Source: Mizuhopecten yessoensis
Taxonomy: Eukaryota
DNA length: 64,000 nt
Assembly: GCF_002113885.1 (NCBI RefSeq)
Contig: NW_018406276.1
Span: forward strand, 128,572 to 192,571
Direction of reading: 5' to 3'
The notes beneath the pieces were generated by a model. That model ran no database searches. It was not told the DNA's origin and saw nothing but the letters and a program-made list of their open reading frames with translations. The first letter of the stretch is position 1, and each line of letters opens with the position of its first letter. Of the stretch, positions 24,400 to 63,010 are shown piece by piece. A program made the translations under genes and the position numbers.

Positions 24400-25452
24400 T
24401 ACCAAAAACCTCCAAAACCCCTGAACCAATTTCAATGAAATTTTGCAGAAACCTTCCATGGCCAAAGGTCAAAAAAAATAGTTGCCGGTTTGGTCCTCAG
24501 CCCCCAGGGGCCTGAGGTGCGGGGCCAAAAAGGGTAAAATTGACTAAAATTTCAAAAATCTTCTTCTTAAGACCCAGATATGGTAGAATCAAATACTCTT
24601 CATAGATGGAAGGGTCTTAAGGTGCTTTACCAAAATTGTGAATTTCTTGACCCTTGGGTCCCACGTTTCCCCCTGGGAAGGGGGTAAACTTTACTATAGT
24701 TTATTTAGGAAAATCACATTTTGGACCAACATTTGTTTAATTGCCATTGGAGGTAATTCAATTTAGGTTAGCATTAGCAGTATTGGGTAGCAGTATGATG
24801 GTATGCACATATGAGCCCTGACTGACCCCCAGGGGCTGATGGGTGGGACCAAAAAGGGTCAAATTGACTGAAATTTCAAAAATCTTCTTCTCAAGACCCA
24901 GATATGGTAGAATCAAATACTCTTCATAGATGGAAGGGTCTTAAGGTTTATGACCCTAGGGTCTCACATTNNNNNNNNNNNNNNNNNNNNNNNNNNNNNN
25001 NNNNNNNNNNNNNNNNNNNNNNNNNNNNNNNNNNNNNNNNNNNNNNNNNNNNNNNNNNNNNNNNNNNNNNNNNNNNNNNNNNNNNNNNNNNNNNNNNNNN
25101 NNNNNNNNNNNNNNNNNNNNNNNNNNNNNNNNNNNNNNNNNNNNNNNNNNNNNNNNNNNNNNNNNNNNNNNNNNNNNNNNNNNNNNNNNNNNNTTTTGAG
25201 CCAGCCCTACCCCCAAGGGCTGTAGGGTGGGGCCCAAAGGAGTCAGTGTGCAAAAATTTCTTCATTTTCCTTGTTTAGAATCAGAGGTGCTAGTTTCAAA
25301 TACTTTTTAGTCTTAAATCTGTATGCTAGATATTGAATAAGGTGGTTTTATTGTTTTTTGTCACTGAATAATATTTCTGTTCATGTTAAAAACAAAATCA
25401 ACTCTCTGTATAAATATATAAGGTGACCGTTAAGGTCCATGGGCCTCTTGTC
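24400..25452 (+). mobile_element. Helentron-associated non-autonomous element (HINE), 3' part, spanning an N gap
   Basis: Repeated core units (GGGGCCAAAAAGGGT..AAAATCTTCTTCT..). The 3' end AGGTGACCGTTAAGGTCCATGGGCCTCTTGT matches the end of the element at 52244-52277. Confidence 0.65.
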
Positions 25453-28400
25453 TTTATCTATGACATTAGGTCAGGATTGGTGTGCTGAGGTCTTGGTACA
25501 CATTTGTACATCTTCTACATCGGTACAATAGATCTTCATTTATGATACTTTAGTTGCCTTTTCTTTATCTATGACATTAGGTCAGGATTGGTGTGCTGAG
25601 GTCTTGGTACAAATTTGTACATCTTCTACATCAGTACAATAGACCTCCATTTATGATTTTTTCAATTGTTTTTTCTTTATCTATGACATTAGGTCAGGAT
25701 TGGTGTGCTGAGGTCTTGGTACAAATTTGTACATCTTCTACTTCTGTAGCCAATCTGACATCAGACCTAAATGATTTTGTTGTCAGGTCAATGAAACCTT
25801 TCTGTAAGCTTACATTGTAATGTGTCCTTGGTCAAAGTATATAGAGACTCGTTCAAGGTCTTACAAACAGTTCCAGGTGGCAAGGACATTATTCTGATCT
25901 CTGTATCCAAATCTTGTTGGCAAATGTTATGACATGTTAAAATAAAGTAGAGATATATATTTATGCCAATAAGTACAACATGACAAAAGTATAGGTATCA
26001 GTATGATGTATATTCGTTGGGTATATAGATGATATATTCATGTGATACATCAGATACAGCATAACATACAAATGACATTTGGCTTGAAAACTATCTCAGC
26101 TGTTCCCCTTATACAAATTTTTGAATCATTTACCTGATCAGTGTGCGACAGTGTAAGTAGACCACCAGTAAAGATGATTCAGCCGCTGCATGGCCCTCGC
26201 TCAGCTGGAGGGGGACTGATATACTGCCGTAATGCATGTTACAAGAACTCTTCGAGAACACTACGTGACCCTCTCACAAATCCGGAAATCCACCCAGCAG
26301 TGAATTCCATCACAGTACATGAGACAGTACCATGCAAATGTTTTGCAAGAACTTGTGAGATTCTTTATTATGTAAACTTGAGATCTGAATATCTCATGAA
26401 TCGAATGATGAATTGATATATGAAATTATTTGAACTTGGGGAAAGATGTATACGTTGTAAATGCTGACAATGATTGACTCGTATTGGTCGAGTTCTTCCC
26501 TGCGTGCCGGGTAGGTCATGCACATTGCATGTTTAAAACATCCGAATGCTGTGATGAACTCCCCTATAGACAGGGACCGACACAGTCTGTTATCGTTATT
26601 TTGGGACTGGTACGAGGCGGAAGTTTGTTCCTGCACCTCGTAGTAGGGAATTAGAAGGGAGGCTAGATTAGTGTCCTTACCTTCAACAATCTGTCGGCGT
26701 AATGACAGCGCCATCAAATCCATTTGAGGAATGTCCTCCGGGGCAACTGGGCCTGTCACGTTGTGTGATTCAAGGCTCGCACTTACCTGAGCTGTGACAC
26801 TTACATTTTGGCGGTTATAACTGTCCTCGAGCGTGAAGGGCTTTGGGACTTTCTCTTTGTCCCCTAGAAGTCGTACGAGGACATTCTACATACCCGACAT
26901 CGTTTCACACAAAGTTTTTAGCATGGGCGACGCCATGTTGTTTGGTACAGTAGACCTCCATTTATGATGCTTTAATCGCCTTTTCTTTATCTATGACATC
27001 GGGTCAGGATTGGTGTGCTGAGGTCTTAATGGTACAAATTTGTACATCTTCTACATCAGTACAATAGACCTCCATTTATGATGCTTTAATTGCCTTTTTC
27101 TTTATCTATGACATGAGGTCAGGATTTAGGACATTATTCTGATGTCTGTATCCAAATCTTGTTGGCAAATATTATCAAATGTTCAAAAAAACCTATAAAT
27201 ATATAAATAAATAGTTTAACAATTACTGTGTTCAGCATTATGGTTGTGACAACTAGTGTAAGACAGACGAATGACATCATTTCAAAACTGTGCATTCTAC
27301 ATCAGTACAATAGACCTCCATTCATGATGCTTTTACAAATGTATTGCCTTTTCTTTTTCTGTGACATTGGGTCAGGAATGGGGTGCTGAGGTCTTGGTAC
27401 AAATTTTTACATCTTTTACATCAGTACAATAGACCTCCATTTATGATGATTTAATTGCCTTTTCTTTATCTATGACATTGGGTCAGGATTGGTGTGCTGT
27501 GGTCTTGGTACAAATTTGTACATCTTCTACATCAGTACAATAGACCTCCATTTATGATGTTTTTAATTGCCTTTTCTTTATCTATCACATTAGGTCAGGA
27601 TTGGTGTGCTGAGGTCTTGGTACAAATTTGTACATCTTCTACATCGGTACAATAGACCTCCATTTATGATGCTTTTATTGCCTTTTCTTTATCTATGACA
27701 TTAGATCAGGATTGCTGTGCTGAGGTCTTGGTACAAATTTGTACATCTTCTACATCAGTACAATAGACCTCCATTTATGATGCTTTTATTGCCTTTTCTT
27801 TATCTATGACATTAGGTCAGGATTGGTGTGCTGAGGTCTTGGTACAAATTTGTACATCTTCTACATCAGTACAATAGACCTCCATTTATGATGCTTTTAT
27901 TGCCTTTTCTTTATCTATGACATTAGGTCAGGATTGGTGTGCTGAGGTCTTGGTACAAATTTGTACATCTTCTACATCAGTACAATAGACCTCCATTTAT
28001 GATGCTTTTATTGCCTTTTCTTTATCTATGACATTAGGTCAGGATTGGTGTGCTGAGGTCTTGGTACAAATTTGTACATCTTCTACATCAGTACAATAGA
28101 CCTCCATTTATGATGCTTTTATTGCCTTTTCTTTATCTATGACATTAGGTCAGGATTGGTGTGCTGAGGTCTTGGTACAAATTTGTACATCTTCTACATC
28201 AGTACAATAGACCTCCATTTATGATGCTTTTATTGCCTTTTCTTTATCTATGACATTAGGTCAGGATTGGTGTGCTGAGGTCTTGGTACAAATTTGTACA
28301 TCTTCTACATCAGTACAATAGACCTCCATTTATGATGCTTTTATTGCCTTTTCTTTATCTATGACATTAGGTCAGGATTGGTGTGCTGAGGTCTTGGTAC

Positions 28401-30897
28401 AAATTTGTACATCTTCTACATCAGTACAATAGACCTCCATTTATGATGCTTTTATTGCCTTTTCTTTATCTATGACATTAGGTCAGGATTGGTGTGCTGA
28501 GGTCTTGGTACAAATTTGTACATCTTCTACATCAGTACAATAGACCTCCATTTATGATGCTTTTATTGCCTTTTCTTTATCTATGACATTAGGTCAGGAT
28601 TGGTGTGCTGAGGTCTTGGTACAAATTTGTACATCTTCTACATCAGTACAATAGACCTCCATTTATGATGCTTTTATTGCCTTTTCTTTATCTATGACAT
28701 TAGGTCAGGATTGGTGTGCTGAGGTCTTGGTACAAATTTGTACATCTTCTACATCAGTACAATAGACCTCCATTTATGATGCTTTTATTGCCTTTTCTTT
28801 ATCTATGACATTAGGTCAGGATTGGTGTGCTGAGGTCTTGGTACAAATTTGTACATCTTCTACATCAGTACAATAGACCTCCATTTATGATGCTTTTATT
28901 GCCTTTTCTTTATCTATGACATTAGGTCAGGATTGGTGTGCTGAGGTCTTGGTACAAATTTGTACATCTTCTACATCAGTACAATAGACCTCCATTTATG
29001 ATGCTTTTATTGCCTTTTCTTTATCTATGACATTAGGTCAGGATTGGTGTGCTGAGGTCTTGGTACAAATTTGTACATCTTCTACATCAGTACAATAGAC
29101 CTCCATTTATGATGCTTTTATTGCCTTTTCTTTATCTATGACATTAGGTCAGGATTGGTGTGCTGAGGTCTTGGTACAAATTTGTACATCTTCTACATCA
29201 GTACAATAGACCTCCATTTATGATGCTTTTATTGCCTTTTCTTTATCTATGACATTAGGTCAGGATTGGTGTGCTGAGGTCTTGGTACAAATTTGTACAT
29301 CTTCTACATCAGTACAATAGACCTCCATTTATGATGCTTTTATTGCCTTTTCTTTATCTATGACATTAGGTCAGGATTGGTGTGCTGAGGTCTTGGTACA
29401 AATTTGTACATCTTCTACATCAGTACAATAGACCTCCATTTATGATGCTTTTATTGCCTTTTCTTTATCTATGACATTAGGTCAGGATTGGTGTGCTGAG
29501 GTCTTGGTACAAATTTGTACATCTTCTACATCAGTACAATAGACCTCCATTTATGATGCTTTTATTGCCTTTTCTTTATCTATGACATTAGGTCAGGATT
29601 GGTGTGCTGAGGTCTTGGTACAAATTTGTACATCTTCTACATCAGTACAATAGACCTCCATTTATGATGCTTTTATTGCCTTTTCTTTATCTATGACATT
29701 AGGTCAGGATTGGTGTGCTGAGGTCTTGGTACAAATTTGTACATCTTCTACATCAGTACAATAGACCTCCATTTATGATGCTTTTATTGCCTTTTCTTTA
29801 TCTATGACATTAGGTCAGGATTGGTGTGCTGAGGTCTTGGTACAAATTTGTACATCTTCTACATCAGTACAATAGACCTCCATTTATGATGCTTTTATTG
29901 CCTTTTCTTTATCTATGACATTAGGTCAGGATTGGTGTGCTGAGGTCTTGGTACAAATTTGTACATCTTCTACATCAGTACAATAGACCTCCATTTATGA
30001 TGCTTTTATTGCCTTTTCTTTATCTATGACATTAGGTCAGGATTGGTGTGCTGAGGTCTTGGTACAAATTTGTACATCTTCTACATCAGTACAATAGACC
30101 TCCATTTATGATGCTTTTATTGCCTTTTCTTTATCTATGACATTAGGTCAGGATTGGTGTGCTGAGGTCTTGGTACAAATTTGTACATCTTCTACATCAG
30201 TACAATAGACCTCCATTTATGATGCTTTTATTGCCTTTTCTTTATCTATGACATTAGGTCAGGATTGGTGTGCTGAGGTCTTGGTACAAATTTGTACATC
30301 TTCTACATCAGTACAATAGACCTCCATTTATGATGCTTTTATTGCCTTTTCTTTATCTATGACATGAGGTCAAGATTGGTGTGCTGAGGTCTTGGTACAA
30401 ATTTGTACATCTTCTACATCAGTACAATAGACCTGCATTTATGATGTTTTTAATTGCCTTTTCTTTATCTCTGACATTGGGTCAGGATTGGTGTGCTGAG
30501 GTTTTGGTTCAAATTTGTACATCTTCAACATCAGTACAATAGACCTCCATTTATGATGCTTTAATTGCCTTTTCTTTATCTATCACATTTGGTCAGGATT
30601 TAGGACATTATTCTGATGTCTGTATCCAAATCTTGTTGGCAAATATTATCAAATGTTCAAAAAGAACTATAAATATATAAATAAATAGTTTTAACAATTA
30701 CTGTGTTCAGCATTCTGGTTGTGACATCTAGTGTAAGACAGACGAATGACATCACTTCAAAACTGCATTCTACATCAGTACAATAGACCTCCATTTATGA
30801 TGTTTTTAATTGCCTTTTCTTTATCTATGACATTAGGTCAGGATTGGTGTGCTGAGGTCTTGGTACAAATTTGTACATCTTCTACATCAGTACAATA
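25452..30897. repeat. 111-bp satellite array, about 35 units in four blocks
   Basis: Unit ...GTCAGGATTGGTGTGCTGAGGTCTTGGTACAAATTTGTACATCTTC... has period 111 (27811, 27922 ... 28921). Blocks lie at about 25452-25745, 26945-27125, 27296-30600 and 30768-30897. About 24 identical units lie at 27720-30360. Confidence 0.95.
26450..26940 (-). mobile_element. DIRS/Ngaro-type gag fragment 1
   Basis: 'IPQMDLM..RRQIVEGKDTNLASLLIP..RL..LSIGEFITAFG..YPARREELDQYE' is the same core as the gag genes lying upstream of RT at 34.4 and 36.7 kb. Confidence 0.8.
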
Positions 30898-30901
30898 TTT
30901 G

Positions 30902-32600
30902 CGTTGGCGTTTGCAAATCATCCTCACGATTCGTAGTAACCTGGATGCCATCTTGTCGCACGGAATTGTGGGATCGCGCACCTCTAGACCTCGCGTCTCT
31001 CAGTTTTTTTTAACCAAAACCGTTCGTTTCTCGTTGGCCCTGAACGGTACCGCCAAAATTGTCAATTCCTCTCGCAAACGAGCTAAAGTCCAATTATCCA
31101 GCATTTCCGGATCGTATGGAACAACTTTGGGATTCCTACGTTTAGGTCCCATGTCTTAAAACTATTGTCTCACAATATAAAGTTGATAGGCCTAGAAAGG
31201 TAGGCACGGTCGAGTGCACGTACAATGTCAAGTTCACACATAAAATGACGAATCACGGCGAAGTATTTCGCTCGCTACACTTATATAGGAAGTGCGTCAC
31301 GTCCTTAAACACAAAGTTGTAAGGTAGTAAAAATAGGTACAACAGTATACGATTAGTAGGCTGCTTTACTCCTCGTGTGTAACAACTATGGTCACTCTGG
31401 CCGGTAAAGTAGGGAATCAGCAGAGCGGCCAAGTTTATATCCCTTCCTGAAATTATTTGCTGTCGCAATGAAGGGGAAACTGTTTCGACTTACGGTAGTG
31501 TTTCTGCTGAAAAGCCATATCGCGTTCTTTGAATAAAGCTCTCACCTTGTGATGCGTTAGTCTCAAGACTCCTGTATGCGGTCTCCAAGGTGTACTCTGC
31601 TTGAACAAGTATGCTCGATTCCGTGGCAAGTTGATTTTCGCTGCCGGCAGCCGCTGCAGGAGAAAATCGACGCCTGGAAGAATTTGTCACGGAACTCACT
31701 GTAGTGGCGTTGCTACTAACGGAATCATTAAATCGTCTTTCAAGTCTGACATAACTGTCTTGAAGTGTAGAAACACTCTCCGCCAAACTAGTGACGATGG
31801 CGACCAACGTTGGCATTTGCAAATCATCCTCACAATTCGTAGTAACCTGGACGCCATCTTGTCGCACGGAATTGTGGGATCACGCACCTCTAGACCTCGC
31901 GTCTCTCAATTTTTTTAACCAAAACCGTTCGTTTCTCGTTGGCCCTGAACGGTACCGCCAAAATTGTCAATTCCTCTCGCAAACGAGCTAAAGTCCAATT
32001 TTGCAGCATTTCCGGATCGTACGGAACAACTCTGGGATTCCTACGTTTAGGTCCCATGTCTTAAAACTATTGTCTCACAATATAAAGTCGATAGGCCTAG
32101 AAAGGTAGGCACGGTCGAGTGCACGTACAATGTCAAGTTCACACATAAAATGACGAATCACGGCGAAGTATTTCGCTCGCTACACTTATATAGGAAGTGC
32201 GTCACGTCCTTAAACACAAAGTTGTAAGGTAGTAGAATACGTACAACAGTATACAATTAGTATGCTGCTTTACTCCTCGTGTGTAACGTAGCCACACCTT
32301 AAGTCCAACAATCACGCAGAAAGTAAACAAACGTTTCTCCTCGTAATAATCCACGTTACAACGTAACAAACCGACGAATTTTAAATCCTACGGCGATGAC
32401 TGTCACTAGTAATCATGGTGTAGTTCAAGTTAAATCCAATAGTGTAGTTAACACTTGAAAAGTCGAGGAAAAACAAACGATGAGAATCCGCCAAAAACAA
32501 AGAATGAATAGGGTGCTGTCAATACTGGTACCCCTCTAGGGGATAATGCTGATTGGTCAAAATCTACCCCACTCATTAGCATAAATATATCAACAACTTG
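30902..32600 (-). mobile_element. DIRS/Ngaro-type gag fragment 2 (5' UTR and N-half), with a duplicated 5' part
   Basis: ATG at 32057: MGPKRRNPRVVPYDPEMLQNWTLARLREEL (LEM/HeH-like N-terminus), then 'YGFSAETLP*VETVSPSLRQQIISGRDINLAALLIP'. 30902-31383 is a diverged copy of 31808-32287. Confidence 0.8.
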
Positions 32601-33752
32601 CATAGAGATGCGTATGACTAGCTACGATATCAAGATGACACGACACAGGAAATAGACCTGACAAAGCACATATTCTTGTAATAAACAACACAAAGAAAAG
32701 ATATAAAATGTACATGAACATTTAGTGCATTTTTTTTTTTTTAACCTAACGAATTCATGACTAAACAAACCATACACTAAACAAGTCATACATGTAGAAG
32801 TACATATAGTTGTATACAAACTATAATTTTAACATTTAACATGTCAAATTATCATCTAAAGATGTTCCGAGTATGAATCAGGCACCTTTGAGGTTCCCGA
32901 AGGGGTAAACTGTCGTATTATAAATTGCTATTGACTGATTTAGATATGTTATGTCTGACCAATGACTACCGTTAATATTTGCGTAGTGCGCACTTTTTTA
33001 AGAGGAAAATGAAGTGTCAAGAAAGGGGTGTACACGATACTCAAGAACAATACAAAACCAGTCCTTGGTCACGACCATTTCTGGTAAATTTTTCGAGGAT
33101 TTTCGGAAATGTTTTGATGTATGCTAACAGCAATACAACTGCTAAATTTGGTTGAATAATCCCTGATTTCATTGCCAATTTAACAATTACGAAAAGTTGC
33201 AAGTTTAAGTCATATAATACTATAGAATCGGATAAATAAACTCGAGTAAAGTAGGCTCAACTTTTCAGGACGTTACGTTGTGAATTGATAAATACCACGT
33301 ATCAGGAAACATAGCGAAGAATTGCATCGGATTTATTACTCTGTGGTTAAAATGTCGTTCAATCCCGAAGCCTTCCGATACACGTTGTTACAACAAACAA
33401 CAAAAAAGGTAAACTACTTGCTTGATTTGAATAATCAAAACAGTTCCATAAACTGCACATTATGCTTAGTGTAATTATTTCTCTATTATTGTATAAAAGA
33501 ATGAAGCTACATAGAAATAGTATGTTAAATTTGTTAAACAATAACAAATCAAATCTACGCTATATCGGCTGAGGTTCAGCTTATCATTTTAATGGTCCCA
33601 GTGGGGGTATCCCACTACTGACCCTTTAGCCCTTCAGCCAGAGGGAGCTGATCACACAGCATGACCCCCTATACAGCTCAGCTAGTACTGATTAGCCTAC
33701 ACTTGTGCAGCTAAAACTAATTATTACTTCTCAGATAAATTGAGATGATATG

Positions 33753-35333
33753 TCACAATATTTCTCTGTCAGTCATAGTACCTTTCTCCAACTCCTGTAG
33801 CTTCTGGATGGCGTCATCTTTGCGTACATAGAACAGAGAACATGATTCCTTGTCTATGAGATAATTTACACTTGGGTGTAATTCATCTTCATGTGGGGCG
33901 GACAGATCTACTATAAGACGTGGTTTCCCAGAGTATTTTCCCACACCTACGCCTATGGGGCTTAAACGGTATTTATCGAAAGTAAACGTTCGAATGGACC
34001 CTGTAAAACTCCCTTCTCCACTTCGCTTTGAATTAATTTATCCACCAAATCCGACTGTGTTATCGCAGACTGAAGATTTTTACACTCCTTTGTTGGTAGC
34101 TCGGTTTTTGATATAAGAGTGTCAAAACCTTTGGACAATCCTTAACACAGGTAATCTATAAACATTTTGTCTGGGTGGAGATCAAGTTCTGTACGGAGTT
34201 GGTCTATATTTACAGGTGTGTTAACGTGTACGTAATTGTCCTCTATCAGTCATTGGTTCTGTTGTGTGTTGTTTTGGACTCCTGTCCCCGATTTATTGGG
34301 TTGCGATCCATTGTTGCCGCCTTTGCACGAATCTGCCCCATGGCTAGTAGATTTACAAGACGTGCAGGCATGATAGAAGAAACAACCATCGCCTCGTGAA
34401 CATTTCCCCGAATTGAAGTTGGTACACAATTCTCTTTTTGTTGTTAAACATTGTTACACATTTCACTTTTTGTCTGTCGAATATATCGGTATCCCTGCCT
34501 TGATAACCCTGTTGGTTTGTAATTTGTGCGCCTCCATTTCCATAATGTAAGTCTTTTTGTACCTTTTTTCGGGGCAGAAAGCAGTGTTGTGTGACGTCAA
34601 ATTGCACAATTGACAAGAGTTCACCCTAGTGTTTCCCATGATCATGGCCAGTAAACCATTATCCTTTAGGACCCAGTCCACCTTGCCTATATTATCATTT
34701 AATGCCGCTGCTGCCCTAGCCGAAAACTGGCAGTGGTAATCGTAGAATTTCCCCCCGTAAACATTAGAAATTTCTACGATATTGACTTCATATCTATCCA
34801 GTTCAATCCTCCCATGGGGGGCTTTCTTGTACACCGTTCTTTTGTACTTCCCGAAAACGTTTATAAACTTGCTGATAGTCAATGATTTTGCAAGTCTGGG
34901 GTCTTCTGTTTCATTTAATGTAATGTTTATAGCCGAGCCGTCCCTATCGTAAACCTCCCTGGGTTTGTGTCTCGGCATTAGAAATTGCGCCAGATTGACG
35001 TCTTGTCCTTCCCAAATAAGTTTCTCTGGGATACTGTCTATGTGGGGGATTGATTCTGAGGGAATACCGAACTCTGATATGGGCAGTCTGTACCCACCTG
35101 TTGCAGACGTAGCTCGGGTATACTCCTTCTCGTCTGGCTCTGTCTCAGGGTTGACTGCAGTGTTTGTAGTTGTCGGTGATACTGTGGGGACATTTCTTGT
35201 CTTCATAATCCCTAGCACAGCAGTCTGCAGTCCCGCGACTGTCTGCTGCATGGATTTCATTGCCTCCATCATGTGTTTGACAGCTTCTGTGTTTTGATCC
35301 ATGGGCGCAGCCATATTTGTTGGTGACGTCACG
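33753..35333 (-). mobile_element. DIRS/Ngaro-type element 3: gag (289-aa ORF) plus 5' part of RT
   Basis: gag core, FYDYHCQFSARAA and Cys/His knuckles, followed by degraded RT 'TPVN..HPD..GFDT..GKYSGKPRLIVDLSAPH'. Confidence 0.85.
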
Positions 35334-35336
35334 NAT

Positions 35337-35490
35337 TTAATACCTTAAACTACAATTCCGAAGTGGCTGAGAAACAGTTTCCACGAGGGGCAGGGTGTTG
35401 GCAGCATATCCGAATGTTGTCCTCGTTGCGTTTGTAGCTGGTGTTTCCAATTGGGCGACGCTACCTGTTGCTGCGCTGGGCCGGTTCCCA
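35337..35490 (-). mobile_element. DIRS/Ngaro-type gag fragment 4
   Basis: 'RTTFGYAANTLPLVETVSQPLR' is homologous to fragments 2 and 7. Confidence 0.65.
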
Positions 35491-38354: not shown

Positions 38355-38359
38355 GTTAA

Positions 38360-40694: not shown

Positions 40695-41320
40695 TTTATA
40701 TGGCCTGATTTATTACATCCAAAACATTTTGCATTTTTGAACCTACAATCGTATGCAAGACGTCGGTGCTCACCACAATGCCTGCACGGTTCTCCTTTGC
40801 CACGTTCAAAGTTCCTCTGACCATCTGACCTTTTCCGTCTGTCTCCAGTTCTCACAGAATTTAAGGTGCTTGTCTCTTTCAGTTCTTTTAATTCTCGTTG
40901 GAGTTCAACGACTTAGCTGGCTAAGTCCACTGTATTGTTGCCCTTCACTGACTCCCACATATAACCATATTTTATAATGTCCTGCAGAGACTGTGGCTCT
41001 TTCCCCAGAATGAAACGCTTTACCTCCTCATTCAATCAATTTAGGACAATGTCCTGGACTTCCTGTGGACCTCTGCCTAAATCGTTTCCTAGGGTTTGGA
41101 CCTTCTCTATATATGTGCGGACTTCATCTTTGCCTTGCCGACCCTCCAGAAACTCCTTTACCAGTCTCGGCCTCGATATTGCACTTGGAACAAACCTGTC
41201 CTTAAACTCGATAATAAGAGTTTCAAAATTGTTTTGTACCTCCTCTGTTAGTGAGTAGTACCAGTTTTCTGCTTTGCCTGCTAGGTACAGGGAAAACTGT
41301 ATCGCTTTGTCCTCCTCCTT
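40695..41320 (-). mobile_element. Gypsy/Ty3-type gag remnant
   Basis: Manual translation gives 'KAIQFSLYLAGKAENWYYSL..FETLIIEFKDRF..RQGKDEVRTYIEKV' (capsid), then the 'CRHCG..DCRFKNAKCFGCNKSGHI' knuckles, with several stops. Confidence 0.75.
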
Positions 41321-41755
41321 TAGCTCACTTGGTCTGAAGGACCAAGGTGAGCTTATGCCATACCGTTGCGTCCGTCGTCTGTCTGTCCGTACGCAACAAT
41401 TTCTTTAAACAACTTCTTCTTAGCCACTGATTGGAATTCAACTAAATTTGACTGGAAGCATCCCTAGGTTGTGGGGATTCAAAATTGTACAATTGATGGG
41501 GCTGACCCCCCAGGGGGCTGAGGGGCGGGGCCAAAAGGGGTCAATTTGGCTGTATTGCTTTAAGCGACTTCTCTTCTGGAACTAAAAAGTGGATATCAAC
41601 CATATTTGACTGGGAGCATCCCTAGGTGGTGGGGATTCAAAATTGTACGAATGATAGGGCTGACCCCCCAGGGGGCTGAGGGGCGGGGCAAAAAGGGGGT
41701 AAATTGGCTATACTGCTTTAAGCGTCTTCTTCTCTGGAACTAAGAGATGGATATC
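41319..41755 (+). mobile_element. HINE/Helentron-type non-autonomous element, 5' part
   Basis: TTTAGCTCACTTGG..CCAAGGTGAGCT 5' inverted repeat, a (GTCY)n tract and two ~160-bp core repeats. Confidence 0.65.
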
Positions 41756-45047: not shown

Positions 45048-45124
45048 TGCTTAAACAGTTCAAGAACTGTTCAGGAACTGTTCTTGAACGTTAAACGAGA
45101 CAAACTGTTCTTGAACTTCTTGTT

Positions 45125-52900: not shown

Positions 52901-55757
52901 AGACTCATTTGATACAATTTCATCAGCAAGTGAGACAGAAGATAATAATGATGCGGGCATTCCAGAAAATGAATATCAAGCTCTCACTCTTTTATCTTGT
53001 TTTTTACGGAACCAGTTTTCGGCGAGTACAAGCAAAGATGTAATACAGACTATAAAAACAATGTTTAAACATCATGAGGACATTTCGAAGCTGGACTTTG
53101 GCCAAATGATGTCCTATGTTGACACTACACCAGTCAGAGAAGTACATTATTGTATAAAGTGCAATACTGTCTTTCCAGGTGACAAGGATGTTTTTCAATG
53201 CCAAACTACCAATTGTGATGGTCTCCGTTATAAAGGTGTATTGTCAAACCAACAAAGCAAGTCCAGACAGCCAAATCAGAGCTTTGTGTTTAGTGATATT
53301 AGGAAACAGCTGATTGATCTTCTCAAAACACCAGGTGATTTTACGTTTAGTTTAGTTTTAGTTTGTTGTGATTTATGACAATAATTTTGCTTTTGTAAAA
53401 TATTTTTTTTTCCTGAAAGCGACATAACAAAACCTGAATTAAATTTAAGTGTCACTGTATATAGTTATATATACAGTAACATCTGAACCTCATTAATTTG
53501 TATAACTCAGAAGACCCTGTTTTATTTGAAATTTTTCCGAGGTCCCAACCAAACTTTACACTATACAGTACTGGATGAAAATATAATGGAGTGTCGTTGA
53601 TAATCATATGATCACAAATTTGTTTTTATTTATATAATGCATTAGATACATGTACAATGCAAATTTATAAACCTATATATATATATGATGCATTAGTTTA
53701 ATTCAAAATGTGTTGTCTTTAATGTTTTTATTTATTTATTACGGGACACTGAGAGTGACTCTAATATTGTTTTACATATATTATATATAGCACATGGTAG
53801 ATCTTTCTGGCATTACCCGTGTCATACCCGTGTCACTTATTAGTCCAGTAGAGTGAAGAAGAGATAAAAAGGTTAAATCCCTCTTAATTTATGTATATAA
53901 TAAAGAAATACTAAAATTATATTATTTTTTTCAGGAATTTGGGAAGATATTCAAACTACTAAAGCAGAATCCTATGAAAGATTTCAATCTGGATCAACCC
54001 TTATCACAGACATTTCTGATGGCAGGGAGTACCAAGCTTTGATGAAGGAGGGCGGGTTTCTTGACCCTAAAACACAGAACATCACAGCAGTGTTTAACAC
54101 TGATGGTGTGAACTTATATTCCTCATCAAAGGTGGAATTATGGCCTATATTTTTAGCTGTAAACGAGCTTAGTCCTCCAAAACGCTTTTGCAGGGATAAC
54201 ATCTTGCTTGTGGGAATATGGCAGGGTAAAGAAAAAACCCCTTTCAATCCATTTTTCAGGATCTTCAGTGAGGATATGAACTCACTGTATAATGTTGGTG
54301 TTGATGTTCAAATTGGAGATGAAGCTTACAATGTGAAGCTTGCAATTATATGTGGCATTGCTGATTTACCAGCTAAAGCAGAAATCCTCAATATGTCATA
54401 TTTCAATGGATCACATGCTTGTATCAAGTGTGAGGAGCCTGGGATGACGGCACAGCAAGGGAAAGGATACGCAAGATGTTTTCCATATAGACTTCAGGGA
54501 GCACGGTATCCAGATCGAAATCATGCAGACGTATTGGTCAACATGGAAAATGATTCTGCAAGAAATAGAGAAAAGGGTTTCAAAGGAGAATCTGGACTCA
54601 AACATTTAGAAAGTTACAACCTTGTACTTGGAACAGTTCCAGATTACATGCATGGCGTACTTCTGGGGGTTACCAAATCACTTATGAACAAATGGTTTTC
54701 TCCATCACAGAGTGGCAAAAATTACTTTATTGGCAACAAATTGAAAGTAATTTCAGAAAAAATGAAGCAGATGAAACCACCAGACAGTATTGAGAGGCTA
54801 CCAAGGGACCTGGAAAAGCATTACAGCCACTTCAAAGCGACAGAACTACAATCTTGGCTCTTATATTATGCTTTTCCATGTTTGCTAGGCATTCTCAAGG
54901 ATGAATTTCTTGAAAACTTCTTGTGTCTCTCTGAAGGTGTCCATATTCTTCTTGGAGACTGCATTAATCAACAATCTCTGAAGAAAGCCATTGATCTCTT
55001 GGATCAGTTTTATTCTGCGTTCCAGAATCTTTATGGTGACGGCTCATGTGGTCTGAACATCCACAACACCAGTGTGCACCTTGCAGAGTATGTGAAGCTT
55101 TGGGGACCATTATGGGCATGGAGTTGTTTTCCGTTTGAGGATGCAAATGCTCAACTTCTCCAAGCTGTTCATGGAACAGGACTGGTTTTGAAACAAGTAA
55201 TGGCTTATAGACAGGCGCAATCTTGCATCCGGAAGAGAGGTCTTGCGCTTAAAAAGAAAGAAGGATGGAAGATAACGTACGAAGCAAATAACTGTGATGT
55301 TGCTGGTATGCTAAAGTCGGTAAAGCTCCAGGAAATGGAAAATGAGGTCAAGGAACAATTAATCACAGTGCATGATAGCTTCAAGTTAAACAATTTGAAG
55401 AAAATGGACAGGATAGTCGTGAATGAAAGACGGTTTTATTCAGAAAACTATAGTCGTATGAAAAAGAGGATATCCAGTGTAGTTCTGTATAACCAACATG
55501 AAATTGGATCAGTGAAGTATTTCATTTTATGTGATGATTTGACTTTCTGTATTATTGAAAAAATGGAGAAGATTCCACCATCTCAACTTCAAATCAGAGT
55601 AGCAAGCCATTTCATTCCTGTAAGATGCACAAAAACCTTGACAGTGGTGAATGTTGAACAGCTTCGTGAAGTCCTTGTTTACCTCAGCTCAAGTGCAATG
55701 AACTGTTCATTTGTTGTCCGAATGCCAAACAACTATGGCCATGCAGTCTTTAAGTGA
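49982..55757 (+). pseudogene. CACTA/CMC DDE transposase with an N-terminal C2H2 finger, ~972 codons, one premature stop
   Basis: Exons 49982-50123, 51267-51398 (GC donor), 52513-53334 and 53935-55757 join in frame. Motifs: DISDGREY, NTDG, DLPAKA, FNG..CIKC, DYMHGVLLG, FKATE, GPLWAWSCFPFE. In-frame TGA at 51341. Confidence 0.88.
51469..52277 (+). mobile_element. HINE/Helentron-type element in transposase intron 2
   Basis: AGGTCACCTGAG..CTCAGGTGACC subterminal inverted repeats, a (CGTC)n tract, ~140-bp core repeats and a 3' hairpin AGGCCCATGGGCCT. Confidence 0.8.
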
Positions 55758-57109: not shown

Positions 57110-58180
57110 TCGACATAAACCTGGTTTATATACATAAACCTTAAATTTTCTATCTGGGTGGTTGCTTAATTCTTGTCTTAAATTGTTCACATTGACAGGT
57201 GTTGAGGCTTGCTTATCAAAGTCGTCACAAGATAGTCACTTTTTGTTTTTTGGACAAGACACTGCCGGGTGTGCCCCATTTAGACAGTTTTTACATGCAT
57301 GTCCGTAAATACATGACGCCCAAAAAACCCTGCCATTATTGTAGTTGTTGCACAGTTCTATTCCCTCGATTACCACTCTTGACCTTCCGTGTTTATCATC
57401 ACCCCCTTTTTGTAGTGACGGCTGTGAATAACTGTTGTCTACTCTACTATTGTTTTGCACGGCCTGCTGATTGCCTCTGTAAAACGGTTTGTCATACTGC
57501 CGATTACTTGTTGGTGCATATTTATTTTGGTATGGCTGTGTGCTGAGTAGGGCAGGGCAGAAATCTGCAGTGTGAGAACCCGCCCCGCATGAGCAGGTGT
57601 ACATTTTAGCTCCTGCCATGAGCATGGGCAGTAGGTTGTTGTCCTTTAACGACCAGTTCACCTTTGAGCTCAATTGGTGCAAAGCAAAGGCACTTCTCGC
57701 AGACGGTTTGGGTGTCTCAAACACATAATCCTCCTAAACTTCCCAAAAGCGGTGATAACCTCACTGATTGTGAGTGTTTTGTTTAATCGTGGGTCAACAC
57801 GGGCCTTGATGTTAAGTTTTCCCCCCTCTGTATAAACTATTCGGTTTCTAGCCACCTCGTAATTGGGGATCAATAGGGCGGCCAAATTCACATCTCTTCC
57901 CTCGAGTATCTGTCTTTTTAAAGGCTCCGACACGAGATCAAGTCGGGGCAAACTGTCGGACGAAATGCCATTACATGACGAAGACAAGTTTGTGTACGCA
58001 CCTGTTGCTGTGTGAACTTGGTTACTGGCCGTCGGTTGATATCGTGACAGTTCCGCCATGGCTGCTTCCAACTTGTTTGTTTCTGTGGGAGTGGTAGCAG
58101 ATTGTAAGCTACGCTCGATCTCGCACTGCAGCAACAAATTTATTGTCGTCTGCAACTAATCCACCACGTTGGTTTGTTGA
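57110..58180 (-). mobile_element. DIRS/Ngaro-type element 6: gag plus the first codons of RT
   Basis: 'GISSDSLPRLDLVS..ILEGRDVNLAALLIP..DPRL', C-terminal 'LCNNYN..C.YGHACKNC..HPAVSC', then 'TPVNVNNLRQELSNHPD'. Confidence 0.85.
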
Positions 58181-60331
58181 TGTCTGTAAATATGTAAATA
58201 AAAGCATGTGGACTCTTCCACTGTCTTTATCCATATCTGGTTGCAAATAAAAAAATAAATAATATAAGAATAAATAGCATTAACTGTGTTTTCTTGGCAC
58301 ATAGTTACCTTAATACCTTAATCTTTTAATGCTTTGATTTTAGTAACATCTTTGTAAATTAAATGCTCTTCAGGTTTGGAGTTTTTTTTTGAGTCCCCAC
58401 AACCTTGTCGATGGCCGTCTTTTGTGTTATTTACTTTCTACATGTTTCGGCCTGCTCTGCAGCAATCATCAGGATATATTTACAATTTCACGTGTTATTG
58501 ACTCAATAACCTTTGTTGAGATTATTATCACTTGATAATGATAGTCGTTCTCGTGCGCGTAGTGAAACATACACTGTGTACATATGTGTATGTCAACAAC
58601 CTGTGGGTTTCCATTACTATTTTTGGAAGTAAACCAGGGATACCAGATTTTTACAACTCATTAGTGTATTCATGCAAAAGATACATGGTTGAAAGGACTA
58701 TGTATGGTTTGGGCATGTTTTGGCCTCCAAATGCATCAAAATTCAAAACCTTTAAATGAACTGTCAAACGACTGTTTCTTTAATTTTGAATACTCCCCAA
58801 ATACTATCATGAAAATATTTATTTGTATTTCTAAATATTGTTGTCTGTAAATATGGTAACAAGTTCAAATGTGCATAAATTAGAAGAAGAAAAAATGTTC
58901 GGTGAATATTCGTCTTATTTTGAATAGTTTCTCTCCAGGAAACTATAGAGCGCATGCTTGAACAAACTTGATATCAAAGGATAATGTGTAGACACCTGTT
59001 ATACATCTTTAATAATGATAATAATATACAACATTTGATATAGGGCCCTATCTAGCTAACATAACACTGGCTAATATCTCCCTATAATGTTCGATATACG
59101 GCAATTTTGCTGTATTAATAGTTCAGTCGTCGGGCAGCTGCAAGGCAGAAAGTTTATGGTGCAATTTTTCTGCCTCACACTGTCTACTGTCGCAGTAAAG
59201 AAAATTTTGGGTGATAGCTAAGGTTTATTACTGTATTATTATTGGTATGTAATATTGCATGTTTTGGAACAGAAATCATTATAACCAAATATTGAAAGCA
59301 AGAGACTGAATGATATAATTCAACAAATGTTTTTGTTTGGATGATAGTCCAATGCTCATTTTAAAGTCGTAATGTTAATAGGTATAGTCGCTCTAGGGTT
59401 ATCACACAAGAAGTTCATTTTTGTTTGTTTTGGGTCTTGGTTAGGTCTAAAGGGCACGCAGATTTAGAGTGATTTCCTTTATATAATTAACACACATGCG
59501 TGTAGCTGCATGAAGGCAAATTGCATCCAAATTGGCTGTTGAAATTGTTGCAAAGTTCAAGACCTTCATGGTAAACAAGTGGACGACTATGACCATCTAC
59601 TGAAGAGAAACTAGAACTCCTAATTGTTCCAATCTTGGAATTTTCGGAAACTCCACTGGGGGCCCCTTGACGCTTAGGGCCAAACACAGAAGTGGGACAA
59701 AAACCTGTTACATGTAAAGGGCTGTCAAACAAGTTACACGTGAGAGGCTGTTGGTTAGTAAAAATATTGCAAAAGAGATCATTGTCTCTAATAGACCAGT
59801 CTATCGGTGTGTTGGTATAGCGGAGTTGTGCTGCCGCCCTGGCTGAAAACTGTCGATGATATTCATAGAACCCTACAGCATATCTAGTGCCCATGTCCAC
59901 GATGTCTCTCTTGTAGAGATCGAGCTCAACACGTCTAGCCGGGTAAACCGAGCACATAACTTGTTTATATATACCAAAAGCCAAAATGAATTCATTCAAA
60001 GTTAAATTCCTGGAAAGTCTTGTGTCAGGCTTGCTTAACGTATGGCCATTTGGGTCACTGTTATTAACGAAGTAGGGTATTAACAATGCTGCGAGGTTTA
60101 TGTCCCTACCAGTAATAATTTGCTGATGTAGAGCGATCGATATCATTTCAACTAAAGAATCTCGAAGTATAGAGCCAACGCCGTACTTCTGGTTTATGTT
60201 TGGTAGGTTCCGAAATCCCGGCTTGGATACCAATTAGTATGCAGGGCGATTGAGAATGTGGGTAAATATAAATCGTAAGAAATCAATCGCAACAAGCCAT
60301 AGGGTAGGTGGTTCTTGGGTTTATTTGGAAG

Positions 60332-60370: not shown

Positions 60371-60457
60371 AATTTTTTCACAAGATTTTTACCCCTAAAG
60401 TACTAAAAATGTGGGCCCATGTTCTATTATTGATGACGTCTATACAATAGTGACGTN

Positions 60458-61126
60458 TCTTTCTGGATCAAGTGGGGGCCTTGCTTTCCCAGGGGAGTGG
60501 AATGGTTTTTTTCCAGTCCTAGAACAGGACACACAAGGTCCTGTCTTGAAAAAACTGTGAGAGTAATTCTCCTCATACACTCGTTGATTTCTTTTTCCGA
60601 GTTCCCAATATGACCCACAGATTTCAGTAAGTTGTCCACTGTCAATGTGGAGGACGAAGCTGTTGAGGATGTGGAGGTCAGTGTAGTGCTGGAGGAACTA
60701 TCCTCTGTAGTAGCAGGATTACTGTTTTGACATGTTCCAGAAAGTTCAGAAAATTTCCTCTTCAAAGACTTAAGGGAGGACCTTAAGTCTTTCACCTCCC
60801 TTTCCAGATGGTCAACCCTCTTCTCCAGCCTTCGACTGCCACTGAAAAATATGAAAATTAAAAAACATACAAAATATAAGATTTAAAACCAAATACCTAT
60901 GCGGGTAAATTAATCATACAGTTAATAAGCCTTAAAAATATTGGGCCTCTAGTCTAAGTTCTGCAGATCACTGATAACATTTTATTAAATAAATAATTTA
61001 TGGTTTAACAGATATTATATATATAAAATAAACTTTCCTTGAGGATGCTAGAAAGTTTGTTATCAAGTTTTATTTGTTTATTTATATGTTTGACAAGTAA
61101 TAATATTTACCTAGGACGCAAATTGG
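60458..61126 (-). repeat. Second partial copy of the BEN-gene last exon and intron
   Basis: Near-identical to about 46087-46744 with small indels; starts at the N at 60457. Confidence 0.88.
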
Positions 61127-62149
61127 ATTATACGATTTATATTTCAACTAAAGTTAATGTTTCTGAAGCGTAACCAAATCTGGTCCTCTTACACGTCTCA
61201 CCTTGTGGTTGCGTTAATTCGTCCTCGAAACATCTGTATGCCGTATTTAAAGTGAACTCCTGTTGTGGTGGAGATGAAGTTGGGGGCACATGTGTCACTG
61301 ATGTGGCCATCTGTCTTTCGCTACCGGCGGCTGGTGCCACTGGAAGCCTGGATTGGGAGTCTTTTTTTTCTTATTCTCTGATGCAACCTGTTTTGCCTAT
61401 TAAACATAAAACGGAAGACAACAGAGGATTAGAGGGGTTCTTTCTCGTTTTCATCTTTGGTCCTATCGGTTACCCGAGTAAAAATATATATACCTTATAA
61501 ATTAGGGGTGCCACGATAAACCGGTATACCAGTACACAGTCACCAAATATTTTATTCCTAGTGTTTATTGTTCAATGCTTTCATTGTTTTGTTGTCTTAT
61601 TTTTGAAAATTTAAATAAAACATTGTTCCAAATCTGGTCCTCTTACACCTCTCACCTTGTGGTTGCGTGGATTCGTCCTCGAAACGTCTGTATCCAACGT
61701 GTACTCCTGTTGTGGTGGAGACGAAGTTGGGGGCACCTGTGTCACTGATGTGGCTATCTGTCTCTCGCTACTGGCGGCTGCTGCTGCCACTGGAAGCCTG
61801 GATTGGGAGTCTATTCTATTCTCCAGTCGCTGATAGCACTCCTGTAATGTAGCTACACTTTCTGATAAGCTCGTAACCAAGTTCACCAAATGGTTATTAC
61901 TACTCGACGACTCGGATTTATGTTGAGATGCAGTGTTTACAGACTCACGTGAAACATCCGGTCCTCCATCTTGCCGCGATGCATTGTGGTATACCGCACC
62001 TCTCCTGTGTGGTCTGACGGGGGTAGAAGTTCTCGCTTCCCGTAACTTCTTGACTAAACACATATGATAAGATCCAGGCCTGAGAGAATGCAGTTATTCC
62101 AGGACCCTAGTAATAGTCCAATTCTCTAGTAATTATTGATATTTTGCAT

Positions 62150-63010
62150 AGTTTTGAACATTCTTTTTCTCCCTTTGCTGATGACAGAACGGGGTTGAAT
62201 GGGAGGTCAATCCACACAAATGGCAGGTGTTCACTTTGGAGTTTCCTACCACCATACTGAGAAGGCCGTTGTCCTTCATGTCCTAGTGGACCTTCTGATT
62301 ACTATCTCTCAAGGCAGTTTCAGCCTTCATGGTGAATGTTTGATATTTCTATAATGTTAGCTTTATAAACAAGTTCTGCCCGTCGTTCTGGAAATTTGTC
62401 GCACATAACCCTTTTGAATTTCCCGAATGCGGTTATGAACTCAGGGATAGTCAGTGACTTGTTCAGACGGGGTCTTCGGACTCATATAGGTGTATGTTTA
62501 TACCCTTATGGCGATCATCCGGGCGGTCGGTCTCGAATTTGGGGATAAGAAGGGAGGCAAAATATACGTACTCCCCCTCCAGAGTTTTCTTCTTGTGAGC
62601 ATTGGATACAATGTCAATGTGGGGAATACTGTCGGAGTTTATGCCCTCACCTGTAGTCTCTGTAGTGTTGTTACCGGTCTGCTCCTGAACTTGTCTCATC
62701 AAAGCGTATGCCGTCGTCAATGTATATTCCTGAGCATTACTCTCAGGCGCATCGCAAGCTCCAATCAGTTTGATGACAGTCTGTTGGAGGCCCTACATAG
62801 TCTGTTGCATATCATGCATGGACGACAACATGCCTTCGATGATCATGTTGTTACCGGCGCTGGAGGCCACCATATGGATCCCGTCCAACTCTCGTCTCTC
62901 ACGTTAGCTCCCGGATTAACACGCAGCTGTTGGCGCCTCACTACCTTGCGGTCTAGCCAATGCCGTCGCGTCACGAAGTAGTTCCGTGTAATTGTCCTGT
63001 GCAGGCGCAC
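62150..63010 (-). mobile_element. DIRS/Ngaro-type gag fragment 8
   Basis: 'GINSDSIPHIDIVSNAHKKKTLEGEYVYFASLLIPKFE..EDP'; related to element 5 but diverged. Confidence 0.8.

What the first reader, a model, noticed from the sequence alone, without database searches (positions are those of the whole stretch)
25452..63010. Candidate flamenco-like uni-strand piRNA cluster: an antisense archive of at least 8 different DIRS/Ngaro gag genes downstream of PRDM4
Seen: eight sequence-distinct DIRS/Ngaro gag pieces (26.5, 31-32, 34/44, 35.4, 36-38, 57-58, 59-62 and 62-63 kb) are all on the minus strand. So are the Gypsy gag, the piggyBac transposase, the BEN exons and the hammerhead motifs. The CMC transposase is the main + strand exception. 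If the eight gags inserted independently, the chance of one shared orientation is 2x(1/2)^8, about 0.008. Established: uni-strand piRNA clusters such as Drosophila flamenco accumulate fragmented retroelements antisense to one long transcript. Inference: this locus is transcribed on +, the same direction as PRDM4, and acts as a silencing memory against YR-retrotransposons.
Basis: partly seen in the sequence, partly recalled or inferred. Interest (0 to 1): 0.88.

Follow-up and report, generated by a model that had tools for sequence, protein, structure and literature searches.

The report
Same-strand retrotransposon gag pile-up beside scallop PRDM4
Downstream of the PRDM4-like gene of the Yesso scallop lies a 38-kb junkyard in which seven different tyrosine-recombinase retrotransposon gag fragments all point the same way; two other scallop genera show the same pattern at the same place, which fits a one-strand piRNA source locus but does not prove one.

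Summary
The observation largely holds. The window is from Mizuhopecten yessoensis. A PRDM4-like gene on the + strand ends at about 20,040. From 25 to 63 kb, a six-frame profile search on both strands finds seven sequence-distinct Ngaro-like gag fragments plus one 99.85% duplicate, all on the minus strand. A Gypsy gag, a piggyBac transposase and two BEN ORFs are also on minus. The only + strand element is an intact CMC transposase. A separate gag at 35.4 kb and the hammerhead motifs were not found.

The gags are independent lineages: the AU test rejects one clade (p = 4e-5). Every fragment is gag with at most the first ~190 residues of pol; there is no RT core, RNase H or recombinase anywhere, although the same genome holds an intact element elsewhere. 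Argopecten irradians and Pecten maximus also carry minus-strand gag-only fragments within 10 kb downstream of their PRDM4-like genes.

The piRNA-cluster reading is plausible (about 0.3) but untested, because no small-RNA data could be mapped here. The rivals are homing of these elements into earlier copies, or a neutral graveyard. Public scallop small-RNA libraries could decide.

The parts
9862..20042 (+). PRDM4-like gene of Mizuhopecten yessoensis: exons, with the stop at about 20040
   Evidence: tblastn of scallop PRDM4-like proteins gives 100% identity to P0047 over 11467-12381. PR/SET is and C2H2. Exons were searched apart and were not joined.
24971..25193 (.). Assembly gap (223 N) between the gene and the TE block
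   Evidence: Both flanks carry the same ~123-bp repeat family in direct orientation, at 69% identity.
25447..30600 (.). 111-bp satellite: 2.7 copies at 25447-25748 and 29 copies at 27342-30600, interrupted by the 26-kb gag fragment
26397..26951 (-). Ngaro-like gag fragment, profile positions 150-297
   Evidence: hmmsearch E = 4e-40; tblastn.
31003..32060 (-). Ngaro-like gag 5' fragment (profile 8-236) with an internal 482-bp direct duplication
33357..35333 (-). 2-kb unit, copy A: gag (profile 99-444), pol residues 1-163 and a 424-bp tail. Its 5' edge is at the single N at 35334.
36191..37764 (-). Ngaro-like gag (profile 41-323, one in-frame stop) plus pol residues 1-190
38966..40478 (-). piggyBac transposase pseudogene with one in-frame stop and one frameshift
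   Evidence: PF13843, E = 4e-65 and 1.6e-5.
40556..41404 (-). Gypsy-type gag (PF03732), followed by an ORF with CCHC-like knuckles
   Evidence: translation.
43070..45047 (-). 2-kb unit, copy B, 99.85% identical to copy A
45960..46744 (-). BEN-domain ORF inside a 0.67-kb repeat unit
   Evidence: PF10523, E = 4.6e-7; repeat.
51598..51646 (.). Assembly gap (49 N) inside a 146-bp tandem array that spans 51553-52101
52488..55757 (+). Intact CMC (Transposase_21) transposase gene, annotated as LOC110451260. It is the only + strand TE.
57131..58203 (-). Ngaro-like gag (profile 134-436, one frameshift) plus pol residues 3-26, ending 30 nt before the single N at 57101
59454..60233 (-). Ngaro-like gag fragment (profile 188-419) in a single ORF
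60458..61127 (-). Second copy of the BEN repeat unit (97.8%), starting at the single N at 60457
61155..62093 (-). N-terminal gag-like ORF related to the 31-kb piece, with a partial 218-bp duplication
62136..62876 (-). Ngaro-like gag fragment (profile 132-369) in three ORF pieces

Best explanation
The block is an orientation-filtered accumulation zone for transposon fragments. It sits on a transcription unit that runs on the + strand from, or just after, the PRDM4-like gene. Retroelement pieces that land antisense to that transcript are kept. The most likely identity of the transcript is a one-strand piRNA precursor, so the locus would supply antisense small RNAs against Ngaro-like elements, and against Gypsy and piggyBac.

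Shown:
- the fragments exist;
- they come from independent lineages;
- they share one strand;
- the same arrangement recurs at the syntenic place in two other scallop genera.

Inferred:
- transcription on the + strand;
- processing into piRNAs;
- any silencing effect.

Not explained by this model: only gag and the first part of pol are present.
For: - All 7-8 gag pieces, the Gypsy gag, piggyBac and both BEN copies are on minus. Only an intact, gene-like CMC transposase is on +.
- The gags are not local duplicates. Each is nearer to a gag from elsewhere than to its neighbours, and the AU test rejects one clade (p = 4e-5).
- Replication in gap-free assemblies. Argopecten has 2 gag fragments at 2.7-5.2 kb downstream of PRDM4-like. 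Pecten maximus has 1 gag and 2 piggyBac fragments at 7.5-9.2 kb downstream. All are on the strand opposite to the gene. There are none in about 94 kb of gene body and upstream sequence in four species.
- TE and satellite sequence fills roughly 60% of the block. The genome is reported as about 20% TE, with DIRS/Ngaro at low copy number (PMC10294476).
- Molluscs have somatic and germline piRNAs and piRNA-producing loci, M. yessoensis included (PMC6128900, PMC11067994, PMC12479628).
- In Drosophila, strand-biased retroelement content predicts flamenco-like clusters (PMC11400887). Antisense insertions in host 3' UTRs are sufficient to start piRNA production (PMC13226689).
Against: - There are no small-RNA or RNA data, so the direction of transcription is unknown.
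- AATAAA is not depleted on the + strand: 33 observed against 23 expected.
- Published proTRAC clusters of M. yessoensis cover only 49 kb of the genome. They are enriched in Penelope, Harbinger, Gypsy, Helitron, L1 and SINE, and DIRS is not mentioned (PMC11067994).
- A random trap should also hold RT, RNase H and recombinase pieces; none is present.
- The non-DIRS elements alone are 5 of 6 co-oriented across species, which is not significant.
- The fragments are at most 57% identical in protein to any element available here, so it cannot be shown that they match active copies.
- Orientation between the five contigs depends on the scaffolding.
Confidence: 0.3

Rival explanations
1. A nest made by the elements themselves. 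Tyrosine-recombinase retroelements integrate preferentially into, or next to, earlier copies at an asymmetric target. An ancestral landing pad downstream of PRDM4-like would then keep attracting new Ngaro-like elements in one orientation in each scallop lineage. Later deletions leave the 5' parts. No host function is needed.
For: [quoted passage not shown]
- One low-copy TE order dominates the block, with 7-8 of 11-12 coding units. It also occurs at the syntenic site in two other genera.
- The strong orientation signal comes from the Ngaro-like pieces alone.
Against: - No recombinase, 3' region or terminal-repeat sequence that could serve as a landing pad is present.
- The break points differ between fragments, so there is no common insertion site.
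- The fragments are separated by unrelated sequence, not joined head to tail.
- The families are too diverged (30-50% protein identity) for homology-driven targeting.
- It does not explain why piggyBac, Gypsy and BEN share the strand.
Confidence: 0.25
2. An ordinary gene-poor TE graveyard. Its strand bias arises by chance, or by mild purifying selection against sense-oriented retroelements near the 3' end of a gene through promoter, splice or poly(A) interference. There is no small-RNA role.
For: - The in-window probability is only 0.016-0.03 and was picked post hoc from a scan.
- The replication in other genera rests on 3 gag and 2 piggyBac fragments (one-sided 0.03-0.12).
- No host gene is seen in the 44 kb after PRDM4-like, so TEs may simply be tolerated there.
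- Antisense bias of retroelements in and near genes is well known (background knowledge).
Against: - Three of four genera carry fragments of a low-copy TE order at the same place, in TE-poor genomes (PMC10294476).
- Summed over species, the split is 14-15 against 1 coding TE units.
- Gene-proximal antisense bias is usually far from complete, and here it extends 43 kb.
Confidence: 0.25
3. Partly an assembly artefact. Contigs of a short-read scaffold were joined or oriented wrongly at repeats, and missing pol and recombinase sequence is hidden in the joins.
For: - Five N runs lie in or beside the block.
- Three single Ns sit exactly at repeat edges or at the end of a pol fragment.
- The M. yessoensis assembly is described as poor, with 82,659 contigs (PMC12479628).
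Against: - Within each contig the gags already agree (3/3, 2/2, 2/2).
- The tandem array is continuous in orientation across the 49-N gap.
- The same assembly holds an intact gag-pol-recombinase element elsewhere.
- The gap-free Argopecten and Pecten assemblies show the same gag-only, minus-strand pattern.
Confidence: 0.07
4. A tandem array of host genes derived from gag. Tandem paralogues would naturally be co-oriented, gag-only and syntenic.
For: - The make-up is gag-only and on one strand, with syntenic occurrence.
- Some ORFs are long (289 and 248 aa).
- pol homology ends at AG|GT-like sites in two copies.
Against: - Monophyly of the window gags is rejected (p = 4e-5). Several group with gags of complete elements.
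- Most copies carry stops or frameshifts, or are truncated at both ends.
- Three copies retain the start of pol.
- There is no nucleotide-level orthology between genera.
Confidence: 0.03

Closest known systems
Drosophila flamenco and flamenco-like unistrand piRNA clusters (PMC10643416, PMC11400887, PMC10495008)
   Same: - A block of tens of kilobases beside a host gene, packed with fragments of many retroelement families that share one strand.
- One TE group dominates.
- The position is kept between related species while the content turns over.
   Different: - The host is a mollusc.
- The dominant elements are tyrosine-recombinase (Ngaro-like) retroelements, not Gypsy-type endogenous retroviruses.
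- Only gag and the start of pol are present.
- Large satellites lie inside the block.
- No piRNA, promoter or transcript evidence exists here.
Antisense retroelement insertions in host-gene 3' UTRs that become piRNA sources (PMC13226689)
   Same: The fragments lie antisense to, and directly downstream of, an expressed host gene. In Argopecten the first is only 2.7 kb past the stop codon.
   Different: The 3' UTR limits of PRDM4-like are unknown. In M. yessoensis the block reaches 43 kb past the stop, which is far beyond a normal UTR.
DIRS-1 clusters of Dictyostelium discoideum (PMC7192593)
   Same: Tyrosine-recombinase retroelements pile up in one place as many fragmented copies, and RNA interference controls them.
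   Different: Those clusters are centromeric, come from one family and contain all parts of the element. Here there are at least five diverged lineages, gag-only, in a euchromatic-looking position beside a gene.
proTRAC-predicted piRNA clusters of molluscs (PMC6128900, PMC11067994)
   Same: The phylum is the same and one study covers the same species. Those clusters are TE-enriched loci, with TE-derived small RNAs enriched in antisense.
   Different: The published M. yessoensis clusters are few (7, averaging 7 kb).

Membership tests
Uni-strand (flamenco-like) piRNA cluster | Abundant 24-31-nt, 1U-biased small RNAs that map to one strand of the locus | not testable with these tools
   No small-RNA data could be mapped. 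The supplement with cluster coordinates is not held.
Uni-strand (flamenco-like) piRNA cluster | TE fragments of many families, mostly on one strand, antisense to the precursor | tested here: met
   10-11 coding TE units lie on minus and 1 on plus. The lineages are independent. That this strand is antisense to a precursor is assumed.
Uni-strand (flamenco-like) piRNA cluster | A single long transcript from a promoter at one end | not testable with these tools
   There are no RNA data. As a weak proxy, poly(A) hexamers are not depleted on +.
Uni-strand (flamenco-like) piRNA cluster | Position conserved between related species while content changes | tested here: met
   Minus-strand gag or piggyBac fragments lie within 10 kb downstream of PRDM4-like in Argopecten and Pecten, and none in Ylistrum. 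There is no nucleotide orthology. Only 10 kb per species could be read.
Uni-strand (flamenco-like) piRNA cluster | Fragments closely match active elements of the same genome | tested here: inconclusive
   An intact Ngaro-like element exists in M. yessoensis (L007), but it shares no nucleotide similarity with the window. Its gag is sister to the 26-kb piece at about 43% identity. No other copies of the genome could be searched.
Ngaro-like tyrosine-recombinase retrotransposon (order DIRS) | Gene order gag, then RT/RNase H, then tyrosine recombinase, with no methyltransferase | tested here: met
   This holds for the relatives L001, L002, L003 and L007: three ORFs with RVT_1, and with Phage_integrase at E = 3e-4 to 3.5e-3, below Pfam's cut-off. 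The window pieces match their gag at E down to 1e-103.
Ngaro-like tyrosine-recombinase retrotransposon (order DIRS) | Split direct terminal repeats | tested here: inconclusive
   No long terminal repeats were found around L007 or in the 2-kb unit. The DIRS versus Ngaro subgroup therefore rests on gene order only.
Ngaro-like tyrosine-recombinase retrotransposon (order DIRS) | RT core, RNase H and recombinase present in the copy | tested here: not met
   None is present in the window on either strand at E<=1. The window holds fragments, not elements.
Hammerhead ribozyme | Match to a hammerhead covariance model | tested here: not met
   No hammerhead family was hit at the gathering score or at E<=1.
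PRDM4 | PR/SET domain followed by C2H2 fingers, and orthology to annotated PRDM4-like proteins | tested here: met
   The exon is 100% identical to the M. yessoensis PRDM4-like protein. Pecten, Ylistrum and Argopecten PRDM4-like proteins are 78-80% identical to one another.

The most novel reading that the evidence does not exclude
A one-strand piRNA source locus anchored to the 3' side of PRDM4-like has been kept in place across scallop genera while its content turned over. It is specialised on the gag region of tyrosine-recombinase retroelements. It would be the first flamenco-like, syntenically conserved cluster outside arthropods.
Probability: 0.15. Interest if true: 0.85.

Novelty: new member of a known kind. 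Interest (0 to 1): 0.5.

Why it matters
Flamenco-type loci are known from flies. Whether other phyla keep positionally conserved, one-strand transposon archives is an open question. A scallop locus with this architecture, recurring in three genera, turns that question into a direct test with public small-RNA libraries.

Two side results stand whatever the outcome:
- The gag-only make-up of ten fragments in three species has no ready explanation.
- The recurrence of a low-copy TE order at one syntenic site says something about how tyrosine-recombinase retroelements insert or are retained.

Tried and rejected
- Rfam scans of the window, at gathering score and at E<=1, gave no hammerhead. The only hits were sub-threshold miRNA-like hairpins in palindromic tandem repeats.
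- There are no tRNAs.
- Pfam gives nothing for the gag ORFs themselves, nor for 40 other ORFs in the window and in the scallop loci.
- A gag at 35.4 kb was not found.
- Local duplication as the source of the gags is rejected by the tree and the AU test.
- Nesting at one common site is rejected because the break points differ.
- Retrocopies of a short gag mRNA: there are no poly(A) tracts at the 3' ends.
- Terminal repeats of the 2-kb unit and of the intact element were not found.
- Terminal inverted repeats of the CMC element were not found.
- Poly(A)-signal depletion on the + strand is not seen.
- Nucleotide orthology of the downstream regions between genera is absent, apart from two weak hits.
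- Exact look-ups of ten window ORFs, meant to find transcripts or further copies, found only the CMC N-terminal ORF on record.
- Published cluster coordinates for M. yessoensis are not held as a supplement.
- Not done, by rule:
  - The PRDM4-like exons were searched one by one and were not joined into a spliced model.
  - No N was filled or looked up.
  - The same locus was not fetched from another copy of this genome.
Trees used single unbroken ORF pieces only.

Full report
**What the window is**

The window comes from the Yesso scallop, Mizuhopecten yessoensis.
- The 311-aa ORF at 11455-12387 (+) found one representative protein. Its cluster holds 'PR domain zinc finger protein 4-like' of Argopecten irradians.
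- A search with that protein returned the PRDM4-like proteins of Pecten maximus, Ylistrum balloti and M. yessoensis.
- The M. yessoensis protein matches the window exon at 11467-12381 at 100%.
- A PR/SET exon lies at 16893-17135. C2H2 finger exons lie at 18.3-20.0 kb.
- The gene is on the + strand and its coding part ends at about 20,040.
- The exons were searched one at a time and were not joined into a spliced model.

**The gaps, tested first**

N runs lie at 24971-25193, 51598-51646, and as single letters at 35334, 57101 and 60457.
- The 49-N gap lies inside a 146-bp tandem array. The last 45 bases before it match unit positions 25-69 in the same orientation as the units that begin at 51647. 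The two sides are therefore co-linear and co-oriented. The number of missing units is unknown, and nothing in the claim is read across the gap.
- The single Ns are not harmless.
  - The N at 35334 is the exact 5' edge of a 2-kb repeat.
  - The N at 60457 is the exact edge of a 0.67-kb repeat.
  - The N at 57101 lies 30 nt beyond the last pol residues of the 57-kb fragment.
- These Ns look like contig joins at repeat borders. On that reading the block consists of five contigs whose mutual orientation depends on the scaffolding.
- No N was filled or looked up.

**The observation**

A gag profile was built from 31 natural relatives and run against all stop-to-stop ORFs of at least 25 aa on both strands. 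It hits only minus-strand ORFs. tblastn with the window's own ORFs and with three related full elements gives the same map.

| Fragment | Coordinates (minus strand) |
|---|---|
| 26 kb | 26397-26885 |
| 31-32 kb | 31003-32060 |
| 34 kb (99.85% copy at 43967-45070) | 34253-35344 |
| 37 kb | 36749-37744 |
| 57-58 kb | 57239-58155 |
| 59-60 kb | 59490-60233 |
| 62 kb | 62136-62792 |

- The ORF at 61614-62093 is an N-terminal gag-like piece related to the 31-kb fragment. It may be the front half of the 59-60-kb gag, split by the BEN-carrying repeat, or it may be a separate piece.
- No separate gag exists at 35.4 kb. The count is therefore seven distinct pieces, or eight at most.
- Also on minus:
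  - a Gypsy-type gag (PF03732) at 41039-41404;
  - a piggyBac transposase pseudogene at 38966-40478;
  - two copies of a BEN-domain ORF.
- On plus there is only the CMC/Transposase_21 gene at 52488-55757.
- Rfam gives no hammerhead, even at E<=1.

**What the gag pieces are**

- The best protein relatives come from bivalves (Mytilus, Mizuhopecten), at up to 57% identity.
- Three contigs that carry such gags show the full element: gag with a CCCH finger, an RT/RNase H ORF, then an ORF with weak Phage_integrase matches, and no methyltransferase. This gene order is that of Ngaro-like members of the DIRS order.
- M. yessoensis itself holds an intact copy on another scaffold, L007: gag 9959-11323, pol 11327-12976, recombinase 12865-13932.

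**Independence**

- In a maximum-likelihood tree the six longest window gags are scattered among gags from elsewhere.
  - The 34-kb piece sits in a well-supported clade with gags of complete elements.
  - The 26-kb piece pairs with the gag of the intact M. yessoensis element.
  - The 57-kb piece pairs with an Argopecten fragment.
  - The 37- and 62-kb pieces are sisters.
- Forcing all six window gags into one clade costs 48.9 log-likelihood units (AU p = 4e-5).
- The pieces are therefore not local duplicates, apart from the 34/44-kb pair and possibly 37/62.
- The same-strand probability is 0.016 for seven events and 0.03 for six. This is modest and post hoc.

- Profiles and tblastn with pol and recombinase proteins of four complete elements, including the species' own, were run on both strands.
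- They find only the first 129-190 residues of pol, behind three of the gags: 33756-34141 (with its copy), 36191-36745 and 57131-57208.
- They find no RT core, RNase H or recombinase anywhere.
- The break points differ from fragment to fragment.
- The same assembly holds an intact element elsewhere, and the gap-free assemblies below show the same pattern. This is therefore not simply an assembly effect.
- I have no good explanation.
  - Abortive reverse transcription would keep 3' parts, not 5' parts.
  - There are no poly(A) tails.
  - There is no common nesting site.

**Comparison with other scallops**

I fetched the PRDM4-like gene with 10 kb on each side from three other genera. I scanned the whole loci with the same profiles and with the window's other TE proteins.

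| Species | Finding within 10 kb downstream |
|---|---|
| Argopecten irradians | Two gag fragments, 27997-28509 and 30027-30507 in L004, which is 2.7-5.2 kb past the gene |
| Pecten maximus | One gag fragment (33941-34162 in L005) between two piggyBac fragments (32795-33921 and 34263-34451) |
| Ylistrum balloti | None |

- All these fragments are on the strand opposite to PRDM4-like, and again there is no pol or recombinase.
- No gag was found in the roughly 94 kb of gene bodies and upstream sequence of the four species.
- The downstream regions share no nucleotide-level orthology.
- The fragments still have long open stretches, so these are recurrent, fairly recent arrivals, not one ancient relic.
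- Pectinids are reported as TE-poor, with DIRS and Ngaro at low copy number in bivalves (PMC10294476).
- On that background, recurrence at one syntenic site in three of four genera is the strongest result here.
- It has limits. Only 10 kb per species could be read, and I could not measure the genome-wide density of such fragments.

**Interpretation**

- The architecture is what a flamenco-like one-strand piRNA cluster looks like.
  - In Drosophila, strand-biased retroelement content is good enough to predict such clusters (PMC11400887, PMC10643416).
  - Antisense insertions just downstream of a host coding region can start piRNA production (PMC13226689).
  - Molluscs, including this species, have piRNAs in soma and germline (PMC6128900, PMC11067994, PMC12479628).
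- Several points keep my confidence in that reading at about 0.3.
  - Nothing here shows transcription or small RNAs.
  - The poly(A) hexamer count gives no hint of a protected + strand transcript.
  - The published clusters of this species are few and enriched in other TE classes.
  - The gag-only make-up is not what a random trap predicts.
- Two rivals are about as good.
  - Tyrosine-recombinase elements may home into earlier copies, as reported for DIRS-1 (PMC7192593). That would explain clustering, shared orientation and inheritance of the site. However, no landing-pad sequence is present and the break points differ.
  - The block may be a tolerated graveyard with chance or mild selective strand bias.
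- A tandem family of gag-derived host genes is rejected by the AU test and by the broken reading frames.
- An assembly artefact is unlikely to explain the whole pattern.

**Verdict**

- If it is a piRNA cluster, it is a new member of a known kind, in a new phylum and against a new TE order.
- Public small-RNA data for this species could settle it.

Noticed in passing
window 52488-55757 (+): The CMC transposase is annotated as LOC110451260 (XP_021354853.1). It is 94% identical (830/880 aa) to an Argopecten irradians protein on a different chromosome, while the neighbouring PRDM4-like proteins are only 78% identical between the two species. This points to recent horizontal transfer between scallops or to a conserved domesticated transposase.
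   Followed up: partly
window 26397-62876, L004 27997-30507, L005 33941-34162: All ten Ngaro-like fragments in three species are gag with at most the first ~190 residues of pol. RT core, RNase H and recombinase are never present. No mechanism I could think of accounts for this.
   Followed up: partly
window 33774 and 36206 (minus strand): In the 34-kb and 37-kb copies, homology to pol stops at sequences that read AG|GT, like splice donors. This may be coincidence, or a hint that these pieces are exons of something.
   Followed up: no
window 33357-35333 and 43070-45047: A discrete 2.0-kb unit is present twice at 99.85% identity with sharp edges on both sides. It consists of a 5'-shortened gag, the start of pol and a 424-bp tail. 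One copy ends at a single N. It is either a small non-autonomous derivative that moved recently, or a product of gap filling.
   Followed up: partly
window 25447-25748 and 27342-30600: A 111-bp satellite has 29 copies at 98% identity and is very T-rich on the + strand (AT skew down to -0.27). The 26-kb gag fragment sits between its two parts.
   Followed up: no
window 24410-24947, 25197-25307, 41424-41755; L004 17378-19928: A ~123-158-bp repeat family flanks the first assembly gap and recurs at 41.4 kb. It is also found, at 76-85% identity, in introns of the Argopecten PRDM4-like gene, so it is a repeat family shared between scallop genera.
   Followed up: no
window 45047-45640 and 56150-56620: Tandem, partly palindromic repeats built on GTTCTTGAAC/TTCAAGAAC lie just upstream of the 44-kb gag unit and just downstream of the CMC gene. 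They cause sub-threshold miRNA-like Rfam hits (MIR9563 and others). They may be subterminal repeats of CMC-type elements.
   Followed up: no
window 46086-46744 and 60458-61127 (-): A 0.67-kb repeat carrying a BEN-domain ORF occurs twice at 97.8% identity, each time just upstream of a gag on the minus strand. The second copy is cut at a single N.
   Followed up: no
L007 9959-13932: An apparently intact Ngaro-like element, with gag, pol and recombinase ORFs free of stops, lies on M. yessoensis scaffold NEDP02001192.1. The family may therefore still be active in this genome.
   Followed up: partly
window 63619-63981: A ~360-bp palindromic region at the end of the window gives long hairpin-like self-matches and a weak MIR9481-like hit.
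   Followed up: no
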